Assembly (NCBI RefSeq): GCF_006345805.1
Contig: NW_021833611.1
Coordinates: 23,322-87,321, forward strand
Reading direction: 5' to 3'
Length of the DNA: 64,000 nt
From: Octopus sinensis
Taxonomy: Eukaryota
A program made the translations under genes and the position numbers. Position 1 is the stretch's first letter, and each line of letters begins with the position of its first letter. The notes under the pieces are model-generated. The model did no database searches, had not been told where the DNA came from, and saw only the letters and a list, made by a program, of their open reading frames with translations. Shown piece after piece: positions 34,382-56,820 of the stretch.

Positions 34382-37300
34382 GATGAGTAAAGTTGGTATC
34401 AGATTCTAGATGAGTATAGTTGGTATGAGATTGTAGATGAGTATACTTGGTATCAGAATGTAGATGAGTATAAATGGTATTAAATTATTGATGAGTATAC
34501 GTGGTATCTAATTCTAGATGAGTATACTTTGTATCAGATTGTAGATGAGTATACTTGGTATCAGATTCAAGATGAGTATAGTTGGTATGAGATTGTAGAT
34601 GAGTATACTTGGTATCAGAATGTAGATGAGTATACATGGTATCAAATATTGATGAGTATACGTGGTATCTAATTCTAGATGAGTATACTTTGTATCAGAT
34701 TGTAGATGAGTATACTTGGTATCAGATTCAAGATGAGTATAGTTGGTATGAGATTGTAGATGAGTATACTTGGTATCAGAATGTAGATGAGTATACATGG
34801 TATCAAATTATTGATGAGTATACTTGGTATCAAATTCTAGATGAGTATATTTGCATCAGATTGTAGATGAGTGTACTTGGTATCAGATTGTAGATGAGTA
34901 TAGTTGGTATGAGATTGCATGTGTATGAGTATACTTGGTATCAGAATGTAGATGAGTATACATGGTATCAAATTATTGATGAGTATCCTTGGTATCTAAT
35001 TCTAGATGTGTATTCTTGGTATCAGAATGTAGATGAGTATACATGGTATCAAATTATTGAAGAGAATCCTTGAAATCTAATTCTAGATCTGTATACTTTG
35101 TATCAGAATGTAGATGAGTATACATGGTATCAAATTATTGATGAGTTTACTTTGTATCTAATTCTAGATGAGTATAATGGTATCAGAATGTAGATGAGTA
35201 TACATGGTATCAAATCATTGATGAGTATACTTGGTATCAGATTATAGATGAGTTCACTTGGTATCAGAATGTAGATGAGTATACATGGTATCAAATTATT
35301 GATGAGTATCCTTGGTATCTAATTCTAGATGAGTATCATTGGTATCAGATTGTAGATGAGTATAGTTGGTATCAGAATGTATATGAGTATACATGGTATC
35401 AAATTATTGATGAGTATACTTGGTATCAGATTGTAGATGAGTATAGTTGGTATGAGATTGTAAATGAGTATACAAGGTATCAGAATGTAGATGAGTATAC
35501 ATGGTACCAAATAATTGATGAGTATCCTTGGTATCTAATTCTAGATGAGTATACTTGGTATCAGATTCCAGATGAGTATAGTTGGTATGAGATTGTAGAT
35601 GAGTATACTTGGTATTAAAATGTAGATGAGTATAGATGGTATCAAATTATCGATGAGTATCCTTGGTATCTAATTCTAGATGAGTATACTTGGTATCTAA
35701 TTCTAGATGAGTATACTTGGTATAAGATTGTAGATGAGTATACTTGGTATCAGATTCCAGATGAGTATTGTTGGTATGAGATTGTAGATGAGTATACTTG
35801 GTATCAGAATGTAGATGAGTATACATGGTATCAAATTATTGATGAGTATACTTGGTATCTAATTCTAGATGTGTATACTTGGTATCAGAATGTAGATGAG
35901 TATACATGGTATCAAATTATTGATGAGTATCCTTGGTATCTAATTCTAGATGAGTATACTTGGTATAAGATTGTAGATGAGTATACTTGGTATCAGATTC
36001 TAGATGAATATAGTTGGTATGAGATTGTAGATGAGTACACTTGGTATCAGAATGTAGATGAGTATACATGGTATCAAATTATTGATGAGTATACGTGGCA
36101 TCTAATTCTAGATGAGTATACTTTGCATCAGATTGTAGATGAGTATAGTTGGTATGAGATGGCAGATGAGTATACTTGGTATCAGAATGTAGATGAGTAT
36201 ACATGGCATCAAATTATTGATGAGTATACGTGGTATCAAATTCTAGATGAGTATACTTGGTATCAGATTGTAGATGAGTATAGTTGGTATGAGATTGTAA
36301 GTGAGTATACTTGGTATCAGATTGTAGATGAGTATATATGGTATCAAATAATTGATGAGTATCCTTGGAATCTAATTCTAGATGAGTATACTTGGCATCA
36401 GATTGTAGATGAGTATAGTTGGTATCAGTTTTAGATGAGTATACTAGGTATCAGATTCTAGATGAGTATAGTTGGTATGAGATTGTACATGAGTATACTT
36501 GGTAGTAGAATGTAGATGAGTAGAGATGGTATAAATTATTGATGCGTATCCTTGGTATCTAATTCTAGATGAGTATACTTGGTATCAGATTGTAGATGAG
36601 TATACTTTGTATAAGATTCTAGATGAGTATATTTGGTATGAGATTGTAGATGAGTATACTTGGTATCAGAATGTAGATGAGTATAGATGGTATCAAATTA
36701 TTGATGAGTATCCTTCGTATCTAATTCTAGATGAGTATACATGGTATCTACTTGTAGATGAGTATACTTGGTATCAGATTGTAGATGAGTACACTTGGTA
36801 TCAGAATGTAGATGAGTATACATGGTACCAAATTATTGATGTTTATACTTGGCATCTAATTCTAGATGAGTATACTTGGTATCAGAATGTAGATGAGTAT
36901 ACATGGTATCAAATTATTGATGAGTATCCTGGGTATCTAATTCTAGATGAGTATACTTGGTATCAGAATGTAGATGAGTATACATGGTATCAAATCATTG
37001 ATGAGTATACCGGTATCAGATTATAGATGAGTATACTTGGTATCGAAATACAAATGAGTATACATGGTATCAAATTATTGATGTGTATCCTTGGTATCTA
37101 GATGAGTATACTTGGTATCAGATTGTAGATGAGTATAGTTGGTATCAGATTGTAGATGAGTATACTTGGTATCAGAATGTAGATGAGTATACATGATATC
37201 AAATTATTGATGAGTATACGTGGTATCTAATTCTAGATGAGTATACTTAGTATCAGATTGTAGATGAGTATAGTTGGTATCAGATTGTAGATGAGTATAC

Positions 37301-55300: not shown

Positions 55301-56820
55301 TCAACTTATTGAGGATATCCTTGGTATCTAATTCTAGATGTGTATTCTTGGTATCAAATTATAGATGAGTATACTGGTATCAAATTATTGTGAGTATACA
55401 CTTGGTATCTAATTCTAGACGAGTATACTTGGTATCAGAATGTAGATGAGTATACATGGATCATCAATTTTTTGATGTGTATACGTGGTATCTAATTCTA
55501 GATGAGTATACTTGGTATCAGAATGTAGATAAGTATACATGGTATCAAATTATTGATGAGTATCCTTGGTATCTAATTCTAGATGAGTATACTTGGTATC
55601 AGAATGTAGATGAGTATACATGGTCTCAAATTATTGATAAGTATACGTGGTATCTAATTCTAGACGAGTATACTTGGTATCAGATTGTAGATGAGTATAC
55701 TTGGTATCAGATTCTAGATGAGTATAGTTGGTATGAGTTTGTAGATGAGTATACTTAGTATCAGAATGTAGATGAGTATACATGGTATCAAATTATTGAT
55801 GAGTATACGTCGTATCAAATTCTAGATGCGTATACTTGGTATCAGATTTTAGATGAGTACTTGATATCAGATATAGACGAGTATAGTTTGTTTCAGATTG
55901 TAGATGAGTATACTTGGTATCAGAATGTAGATGAGTATACATGGTATCAAATTATTGAAGATTATACATGGTATCAAATTCTAGATGAGTATACTTGGTA
56001 TCAGATTGTAGATGAGTATACTTTGATATCAGATATAGATGAGTATAGTTGTATGAGATTGTAGTTGAGTATACTTGGTATCAGAATGTAGATGAGTATA
56101 CATGGTATCAATTATTTATGAGTATAGGTGGTATCTAATTCTAGATGATATTCTTTGTATCAGATTGTAGATGAGTATACTTGGTATCAGATTGTAGGTG
56201 AGTATACTTGTATCTAATTCTAATTCTAGATGAGTATTCTTGGTATCAGAATGTAGATGAGTGTACATGGTATCAAATTATTGATGAGTATACGAGGTAT
56301 CAAATTCTAGATGAGTATACTTGGTATCAGATTGTAGATGAGTTTAGTTGGTTTGAGTTTGTTGATGAGTATACTTGTTTTCAGAATGTAGATGAGTACA
56401 CTTGGTATCAGAATGTAAATGAGTATACCTGGTATCAAATTATTGATGAGTATCCTTGGTATCTAATTGTAGATATGTATACTTGGTGTCAGAATGTAGA
56501 TGAGTATACATGGTATCAAATTATTGATGAGTATACGTGGTATCTAATTCTAGACGAGTATACTTGGTATCAGAATGTAGATGAGTATACATGGTATCAA
56601 ATTATTGATGAGTATACGTGGTATCTAATTCTAGATGAGTATACTTGGTATCAGATTGTAGATGAGTATATTTGGTATCAGATTGTAGATGAGTATACTT
56701 GGTATCAGAATGTAGATGAGTATACATGGTATCAAATTATTGATGAGCATACTTGGTATCTAATTCTAGACGAGTATACTTGGTATCAGAATGTAGATGA
56801 GTATACATGGTATCAAATTA
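34382..56820. repeat. Satellite array: 27-bp monomer, 81-bp higher-order repeat, about 830 monomers
   Basis: Monomers A GATGAGTATACTTGGTATCAGAATGTA, B GATGAGTATACATGGTATCAAATTATT, C GATGAGTAT(CCT/ACG/ACT)TGGTATCTAATTCTA, plus D (...CAGATTGTA) and E (...AGTTGGTATGAGATTGTW); 22439 bp / 27 is about 831. Confidence 0.97.

What the first reader, a model, noticed from the sequence alone, without database searches (positions are those of the whole stretch)
34382..56820. 22.4-kb 27-bp satellite with five monomer types and an 81-bp higher-order repeat
Seen: an uninterrupted array with no TE insertions, in a region otherwise hit every few hundred bases. The ABC trimer dominates 37.8-41.4 kb, while D/E monomers are richer at the left edge and in periodic cassettes. 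Monomers carry the palindromes GTATAC/AGTATACT and C/A junctions carry TCTAGA. Known: hierarchical HORs and TE exclusion mark actively homogenised arrays such as centromeric and pericentromeric satellites. Inference: a young, expanding, possibly functional satellite; I do not recognise it as a named family.
Basis: partly seen in the sequence, partly recalled or inferred. Interest (0 to 1): 0.75.

Follow-up and report, generated by a model that had tools for sequence, protein, structure and literature searches.

The report
Low-copy 27-bp octopus satellite array
The 22.4-kb block is a real, uninterrupted tandem array of a 27-base unit with an 81-base higher-order repeat. It is the largest of eleven small arrays (about 94 kb in a 2.7-Gb genome) that share flanking DNA, so it looks like an ordinary non-coding satellite spread by duplication, not a centromere.

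Summary
Window 34377-56822 holds about 835 head-to-tail 27-bp monomers of five types (A, B, C/c, D, E). The B-A-C trimer (81 bp) covers 66% of the array. D and E monomers are enriched at the left edge and in recurring cassettes. No insertion is longer than 5 bp.

A whole-genome count of the 19-base core gives 1473 hits, and eleven arrays of 2.4-22.4 kb account for all of them. They lie on six chromosome-size contigs and three unplaced scaffolds and total about 94 kb (0.003% of the assembly). All eleven share low-copy flanking DNA at 93-97% identity, so one progenitor locus was duplicated around the genome.

The other arrays show how the 81-bp repeat arose. D is the central and edge monomer type. 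A 162-bp D-D-E-B-A-c hexamer dominates C7 and C12 and survives at the window's left edge. The B-A-C trimer is that hexamer without D-D-E.

Trimer copies within the window are on average only 92.6% identical, about the same as between loci. Nearest neighbours are 98.3% identical and mostly local, and 1-1.2-kb internal duplications exist. Growth is therefore by local unequal exchange, not array-wide homogenisation.

Nothing supports coding, RNA, centromere or other function. Read-based checks of array size could not be run.

The parts
34377..56822 (+). The 27-bp satellite array: about 835 monomers, uninterrupted, G-rich on the + strand (GC skew about +0.42)
   Evidence: TRF; composition; wraparound segmentation
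34382..36380 (+). Left-edge zone rich in D and E monomers, built mostly of D-D-E-B-A-c hexamers (162 bp), the older higher-order unit
   Evidence: Type string; D+E fraction 0.38. The same hexamer dominates the C7 and C12 arrays
38370..44354 (+). Zone dominated by the B-A-C trimer (81 bp). The longest pure runs are (BAC)13 at 43225-44276 and (BAC)10 at 40368-41177
   Evidence: trimer coverage 0.73-0.84
42150..43340 (+). One arm of the longest internal duplication: 44 monomers, 98.1% identical to the copy starting at 49691
   Evidence: Monomer-lag diagonal scan
49691..50880 (+). Second arm of that internal duplication. Another pair, 48694 and 50393, covers 41 monomers at 98.3%
33900..34376 (+). 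Left flank shared only with the C26 array (95% over all 477 bp) and the C9 array (93% over bases 1-216). Its first ~170 bp are a high-copy TE
   Evidence: homology with C9 continues further left
56823..57153 (+). 331-bp high-copy SINE-like element that the array abuts directly. The same insertion lies in the right flank of the C26 array, and part of it in C9
   Evidence: 7037 candidates, about 94-95% identity
57154..57498 (+). Remnant of the family's common right flank. It matches positions ~1727-2112 of the flank that starts at position 1 beside the C28 and C3 arrays (88-89% by BLAST, 94-95% ungapped)

Best explanation
This is a non-coding, low-abundance satellite (large minisatellite) family of an octopus-type genome. 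The window holds its largest assembled array.

Shown:
- The 27-bp unit occurs only in eleven arrays.
- These arrays share low-copy flanking DNA, so they descend from one locus that was copied, array plus flanks, to other chromosomes.
- Monomer types A-E and the 162-bp D-D-E-B-A-c unit are common to loci whose flanks differ by 3-7%.
- The window, C26 and C9 form a sub-group. They share their own left flank, a SINE in the right flank, the 'CCT' form of monomer C and dominance of the B-A-C trimer.

Inferred:
- The array began by slippage or unequal exchange of a D-type unit in unique DNA. Diverged D-like monomers form the edges of the conserved flanks.
- A six-monomer unit was then amplified. Loss of D-D-E gave the 81-bp B-A-C unit, which expanded in the interior of the window array by unequal sister-chromatid exchange or replication slippage.
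- Kilobase-scale duplications were layered on top.
- The same turnover removes TE insertions and has deleted flank next to the array. The right flank begins at position 1, 480, 725, 789 or about 1590 in different loci.

There is no evidence of a cellular function. I take the array to be neutral or selfish DNA.
For: - Array anatomy.
- Census: the 19-base core has 1473 exact hits in the genome and 0 for the reversed control. 1365 of them lie in the stretches I fetched. The remaining ~108 fit the unfetched ends of the C26 and C9 arrays, whose far flanks were located.
- Shared flanks. The flanks are low copy, 5 and about 9 places, at 93-97% identity, and 99% between the two C28 copies.
- Type strings per locus.
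- D is the type closest to all the others. It also sits at array edges and in the degenerate monomer of the left flank.
- Local amplification.
- No insertion above 5 bp in 87,212 bp of arrays, although at least one TE entered the right flank of C12 after the dispersal.
- Non-coding: 92 of the 97 monomers that are not 27 bp differ by a length that is not a multiple of three. The only Pfam match is a repeat artefact, and Rfam gives nothing.
Against: - Array length and total abundance rest on one long-read assembly. The window lies on an unplaced 87-kb scaffold, and collapsed or unassembled arrays cannot be excluded because the read tools could not be used.
- Centromere positions in this genome are unknown to me. 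Several arrays lie mid-chromosome (C3 at 53% of its length, C26 at 58%).
- The means of dispersal is not shown. Copying onto six chromosomes with defined flanks could also reflect a low-copy mobile element.
- The order D, then hexamer, then trimer is inferred from distribution, not from a rooted tree. The nearly pure-D array C28b must be secondary, because its 99%-identical neighbour C28a carries all the types.
- Some 1-bp length variants may be assembly errors.
Confidence: 0.78

Rival explanations
1. The array and its conserved flanks are the cargo of a low-copy mobile element (for example a Helitron-like or other large DNA element with an internal tandem repeat), and transposition rather than segmental duplication spread it.
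For: The same left and right flanks surround arrays on C3, C28 (twice) and scaffolds C10474/C1848. Right-flank pieces accompany the arrays on C7, C9, C12, C26 and in the window. TE-borne satellites are well known in molluscs (general knowledge; other notes of this scan describe TE-derived arrays in this genome).
Against: Only 5-9 copies of the flanks exist. The extent of shared flank differs from pair to pair: 487 bp, about 940 bp or more than 6 kb on the left. The long left flank contains an unrelated LINE. No ORF of the near flanks matches Pfam. I did not search for termini or target-site duplications.
Confidence: 0.13
2. A functional centromeric or pericentromeric satellite, as the first reader suggested by analogy with higher-order repeats and TE exclusion.
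For: There is a higher-order repeat structure, no TE insertions, and inter-chromosomal sharing of array plus flanks, which in primates is typical of pericentromeres (general knowledge).
Against: The arrays total about 94 kb, in pieces of 2.4-22 kb. They sit on six of about thirty chromosome-size contigs, with two arrays 120 kb apart on C28. Higher-order copies are only 92.6% identical on average.
Confidence: 0.06
3. The 22.4-kb length is largely an assembly artefact (mis-sized or chimeric array on an unplaced scaffold).
For: The scaffold is unplaced and 87 kb long. 12% of monomers carry 1-2-bp length changes, more than in C26 or C28b, which suggests less polished sequence.
Against: Both flanks are present and are homologous to the flanks of C26 and C9. 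The order of cassettes is aperiodic and individual, not a collapsed consensus. Four other arrays of 10-16 kb exist.
Confidence: 0.1
4. A protein-coding 9-residue repeat (frame 1 of the monomer reads D-E-Y-T-W-Y-Q-I-V without a stop).
For: 27 bp is nine codons. ORFs of up to 417 codons occur on the + strand. Some type-defining changes are synonymous in that frame.
Against: 92 of 97 length-variant monomers shift the frame. Three of the six frames of the unit are open anyway. Only three of the six variable columns are third positions. The sole Pfam match (COX_ARM) has no stretch that passes on its own. In C7 and C12 parts of the array are inverted.
Confidence: 0.01

Closest known systems
Higher-order-repeat satellites (for example primate alpha satellite, and many invertebrate satDNAs)
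   Same: Head-to-tail monomers of distinct types are amplified as multi-monomer units. Older, more diverged monomers sit at the array edge. Kilobase duplications occur inside the array. There are no TE insertions.
   Different: The monomer is only 27 bp. The family totals about 94 kb rather than megabases. Higher-order copies are 92.6% rather than 97-100% identical. The arrays are on a minority of chromosomes. No link to centromeres is shown.
Large minisatellites / macrosatellite-like dispersed arrays carried in segmental duplications
   Same: Low-copy arrays of a few to tens of kb have recognisable paralogous flanks on several chromosomes. Array sizes and internal organisation differ between paralogues.
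   Different: No gene or regulatory element is associated with the unit here, and the unit is far shorter than classical macrosatellites.
TE-derived tandem arrays reported elsewhere in this genome by this scan (SINE-, LINE- and MITE-derived arrays)
   Same: Same genome, similar array sizes (8-20 kb), higher-order organisation.
   Different: Neither this monomer nor its flanks belong to a high-copy TE. The unit seems to have arisen in unique DNA.

Membership tests
Satellite DNA with higher-order repeats | Long head-to-tail array of one unit | tested here: met
   833 copies, period 27, 22.4 kb; 731 of 835 monomers are exactly 27 bp
Satellite DNA with higher-order repeats | Distinct monomer types recurring in a fixed order, with higher identity at the multi-monomer lag | tested here: met
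   Identity 0.864 at lags 3 and 6 v 0.79-0.80 at other lags; 184 B-A-C trimers and 11 D-D-E-B-A-C hexamers
Satellite DNA with higher-order repeats | Near-identity (above about 95%) of higher-order copies across the array | tested here: not met
   Mean pairwise identity of trimers 92.6%; only nearest neighbours reach 98.3%
Centromeric satellite | Present on all or most chromosomes in large arrays | tested here: not met
   Eleven arrays of 2.4-22 kb on C3, C7, C9, C12, C26, C28 and three scaffolds; about 94 kb in 2.72 Gb. Valid for the assembly only
Centromeric satellite | Association with CENP-A or the primary constriction | not testable with these tools
   No chromatin or cytogenetic data are available
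TE-derived satellite | Monomer or immediate flanks homologous to a dispersed high-copy element | tested here: not met
   The core motif is found only in the arrays plus one 2-monomer mini-locus. The left flank has 5 copies and the right flank about 9
Segmentally duplicated array family | Paralogous unique flanks on both sides of arrays at different loci | tested here: met
   Both flanks are shared by C28a, C28b, C3 and C10474. The right flank is shared by all loci. A second left flank is shared by the window, C26 and C9
Coding tandem repeat | Reading frame preserved across units | tested here: not met
   92 of 97 length variants are not multiples of three

The most novel reading that the evidence does not exclude
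The eleven paralogous arrays, each tied to flanks whose divergence can be dated, preserve successive stages of one satellite's history: D-type monomeric array, 162-bp hexamer, 81-bp trimer, then kb-scale cassettes, with flank erosion at microhomologies. This would allow rates of higher-order-repeat birth, array turnover and TE purging to be measured in a cephalopod. Alternatively, the arrays mark pericentromeric duplication zones of a subset of octopus chromosomes.
Probability: 0.12. Interest if true: 0.5.

Novelty: new member of a known kind. Interest (0 to 1): 0.27.

Why it matters
The finding adds little beyond an uncatalogued satellite family in an octopus genome. Its modest value is as a worked example. 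Every copy of the family is assembled with its flanks, so one can see that the 81-bp repeat derives from an older 162-bp repeat. One can also see that arrays at different loci have gone different ways, and that TE-free arrays need not be centromeric or abundant. It also warns against reading higher-order structure plus TE absence as evidence of function.

Tried and rejected
- Coding repeat: rejected on frameshifts. The only Pfam hit is a repeat artefact.
- Structured RNA: no Rfam family at gathering score in 30-60 kb.
- Hairpin or cruciform potential of the palindromes: a 162-nt stretch folded as DNA gives -9.6 kcal/mol, z = 0.39 against shuffles.
- TE origin of the flanks: the near-flank ORFs have no Pfam match. 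The only TE genes are a LINE ORF1/endonuclease 3-4 kb from the C28b array and retroelement debris in the window.
I placed the ends indirectly.
- Earlier notes of this scan: none at this place or by sequence.
- Literature: five searches on octopus or cephalopod satellite DNA, higher-order repeats and centromeres found no description of this repeat. Repbase and Dfam could not be consulted.
- Presence in related species could not be tested, because the genome collection holds no relatives of this genome.
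Full report
**Observation**

Tandem Repeats Finder reports a single array at 34377-56819: period 27, 833 copies, 79% matches, 1% indels. Composition changes sharply there. GC is about 0.31 and GC skew about +0.42, against about 0 in the flanks.

A wraparound alignment to the consensus splits the array into 835 monomers. Of these, 731 are exactly 27 bp and none is longer than 32 bp, so the array is uninterrupted. Variation is concentrated in a few columns. In the frame starting GATGAG it defines these types:

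| Type | Monomers | Diagnostic sequence |
|---|---|---|
| A | about 220 | ..ACATGGTATCAAATTATT |
| B | about 225 | ..ACTTGGTATCAGAATGTA |
| C/c | about 217 | ..TGGTATCTAATTCTA; C has TATCCT, c has TATACG |
| D | 132 | ..CAGATTGTA |
| E | about 35 | ..TATAGTTGGTATGAGATTGTA |

Within-type identity is 90-94% and between-type identity 72-88%. Mean monomer identity is 0.864 at lags 3 and 6, against 0.79-0.80 at other small lags. B-A-C trimers (81 bp) cover 66% of the array and 73-84% of 38.4-44.4 kb. The D+E fraction falls from 0.38 in the first 2 kb to 0.12-0.19 in the middle.

GTATAC occurs 551 times, AGTATACT 261 times and TCTAGA 212 times inside the array, against 12, 0 and 8 in the other 41.6 kb.

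**A third tier of structure**

Scanning diagonals in monomer space finds blocks of 30-44 monomers (about 1-1.2 kb) that recur at 97.5-98.3% identity. Examples are 42150 and 49691, 48694 and 50393, and 44622 and 54286. The motif D-E-B-B-A recurs 16 times at irregular spacings of 0.3-2.4 kb.

**Genome-wide census**

The window is G000:C10082:23322-87321, on an unplaced 87,321-bp scaffold of a 2.72-Gb assembly in 13,516 contigs. Notes by other agents of this scan call the genome Octopus sinensis. I did not verify the species.

A four-trimer query found further arrays on C3, C7, C12 and C28, the last with two. Flank searches added C9, C26, C10474 and C1848. The 19-base core GATGAGTATACNTGGTATC has 1473 exact matches in the genome and none for the reversed control. 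The window holds 331 of them and the other fetched stretches 1034. The remaining ~108 fit the unfetched ends of the C26 and C9 arrays, whose far flanks were located by homology with the window's left flank.

| Locus | Array length | Note |
|---|---|---|
| window | 22.4 kb | unplaced scaffold |
| C9 | at most 15.8 kb | far end placed |
| C1848 | at least 10.5 kb | runs to the contig end |
| C10474 | 10.3 kb | type string almost the same as C1848, perhaps the other haplotype |
| C26 | about 9.9 kb | far end placed |
| C7 | 8.6 kb | three blocks, - + - |
| C12 | 6.5 kb | three blocks, + - + |
| C28a | 4.3 kb | |
| C3 | 2.9 kb | |
| C28b | 2.4 kb | |

A mini-locus with two monomers lies at C7:9.14 Mb. 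The total is about 94 kb, or 0.003% of the assembly. The window array is the largest, about a quarter of the family.

**Shared flanks**

The arrays at C28a, C28b and C3 have the same sequence on both sides. The left flank matches over 487 bp to more than 6 kb and the right flank over 2.7-3.9 kb, at 90-97% identity by BLAST. These flanks are low copy: 5 places for the last 485 bp of the left flank and about 9 for the first 1.7 kb of the right flank. Each of those places lies beside an array. Ungapped identity between loci is 93-97%, and 99% between the two C28 copies.

The right flank meets the array at a different point in different loci:
- position 1 in C28a, C28b, C3 and C10474
- position 480 in C7
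- position 725 in C26 and C9, which share the same junction
- position 789 in C12
- about position 1590 in the window

In the window the array abuts a 331-bp high-copy SINE-like element at 56823-57153 (about 7000 candidates). The same element lies in the C26 flank, and part of it in C9. Right-flank homology follows at 57154-57498.

The window's left flank (33900-34376) is not the common left flank. It is shared with C26 (95%) and C9 (93%). The window, C26 and C9 are thus a sub-family with their own left flank, the SINE, the 'CCT' form of monomer C and dominance of the trimer.

At all five truncated junctions the flank begins GA, GAT or GATGA, like the monomer. This hints at microhomology-mediated deletion. 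However, I defined array ends at the monomer phase, so the argument is partly circular.

**History of the repeat units**

Type strings for all arrays show:
- C28b is almost pure D.
- C28a and C3 are D-rich, with D-D-D-B-A-c and D-D-E-B-A-c units.
- C7 and C12 are long runs of the hexamer D-D-E-B-A-c (162 bp).
- C26, C9 and the window are B-A-C trimers with interspersed hexamers.
- C10474/C1848 are B-A-c and B-B-A-c units.

D is the type nearest to all the others. It forms the edges of arrays and matches the degenerate monomer embedded in the left flank. I therefore infer the order D monomers, then hexamer, then trimer by loss of D-D-E.

The types and the hexamer occur in loci whose flanks differ by 3-7%, so they predate the dispersal. 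C28b's pure-D state must be secondary, because its 99%-identical neighbour C28a has all the types.

**Age and homogenisation**

Mean pairwise identity of B-A-C trimers is 92.6% within the window and 92.6-93.3% to C26, C9 and C7. There is therefore no array-wide, locus-specific homogenisation.

Even so, 81% of nearest neighbours lie in the same array (31% expected) at 98.3% identity. This fits the kilobase duplications. The pattern is continual local duplication and deletion, not a young sweep. Part of the 1-bp length variation (97 of 835 monomers, mostly 26 bp) may be assembly error. The rate differs between contigs.

**TE absence**

Two TE families alone contribute at least 16 copies to the 41.6 kb of window flanks. 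Several flank elements are very young and abundant. At least one TE entered the right flank of C12 after the dispersal. Yet the 87,212 bp of arrays I examined carry no insertion above 5 bp. Turnover by unequal exchange is the simplest explanation (inference). It does not require function.

**Function**

- The unit is not coding: 92 of 97 length variants break the frame, and the one Pfam hit is a repeat artefact.
- There is no Rfam match.
- There is no single-strand structure beyond shuffles (z = 0.39).
- The window flanks hold only retroelement debris.
- The arrays sit at 26-84% of chromosome length on six of about thirty chromosome-size contigs.

None of this supports a centromeric role, but centromere positions are unknown to me and unassembled arrays cannot be excluded.

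**Limits**

- No related genome is available.
- Repeat libraries could not be consulted. Five literature searches found no description of this repeat.

**Verdict**

The array is real and was accurately described. It is an ordinary, small satellite family that I found uncatalogued in the literature I could search. It was dispersed by duplication and grows by local unequal exchange. Suggestions of centromeric function or active array-wide homogenisation are not supported.

Noticed in passing
L032:2072-2182 (G000:C7:9143072-9143182): A mini-locus with the last ~57 bp of the family's left flank and only two monomers, followed by a (CA)n run and no right flank. It is either a collapsed array or a fragmentary copy.
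   Followed up: partly
window 56823-57153: A 331-bp SINE-like element with about 7000 candidate copies at 94-95% identity. The satellite array ends exactly at its first base.
   Followed up: partly
window 32366-33190: An ~820-bp element with more than 12,000 candidate copies at 94-98% identity, which looks like a very young, highly successful TE family.
   Followed up: no
window 57485-58430: A ~930-bp repeat found on many chromosomes at 89-94%. At some places (C4:116967081-116969804, C9:39797870-39799114) it occurs as overlapping tandem copies, so it forms arrays of its own elsewhere.
   Followed up: no
window 18344-18711: Two tandem copies of a 184-bp SINE-like unit flanked by TATC/ATGT microsatellites. 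At least seven copies of this unit lie in the window's flanks.
   Followed up: partly
window 24080-24691 (-) and 11669-12364 (+): A reverse-transcriptase fragment (RVT_1, E = 7e-13) and a weak zinc-knuckle ORF, which are retroelement debris. The GC-rich stretch 14-16 kb matches a repeat that is also beside the C3 array (82.9% over 1.5 kb).
   Followed up: partly
L029:2212-4721 (G000:C28:5377212-5379721): LINE remains (ORF1 with a CCCH zinc finger, and an AP-endonuclease domain) 3-4 kb from the C28b array. The C3 locus shares them, so the duplicated segment included this LINE.
   Followed up: partly
G000:C7:98759502-98768111 and C12:64599461-64605920: Both arrays contain inverted blocks (- + - and + - +) joined within a few tens of bases, i.e. 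intra-array inversions without foreign DNA.
   Followed up: partly
L034-L036 (C10474) and L037-L038 (C1848): These two unplaced scaffolds carry arrays with nearly the same monomer-type string for the first ~200 monomers and then diverge. They are probably two haplotypes of one locus, with different array lengths.
   Followed up: no
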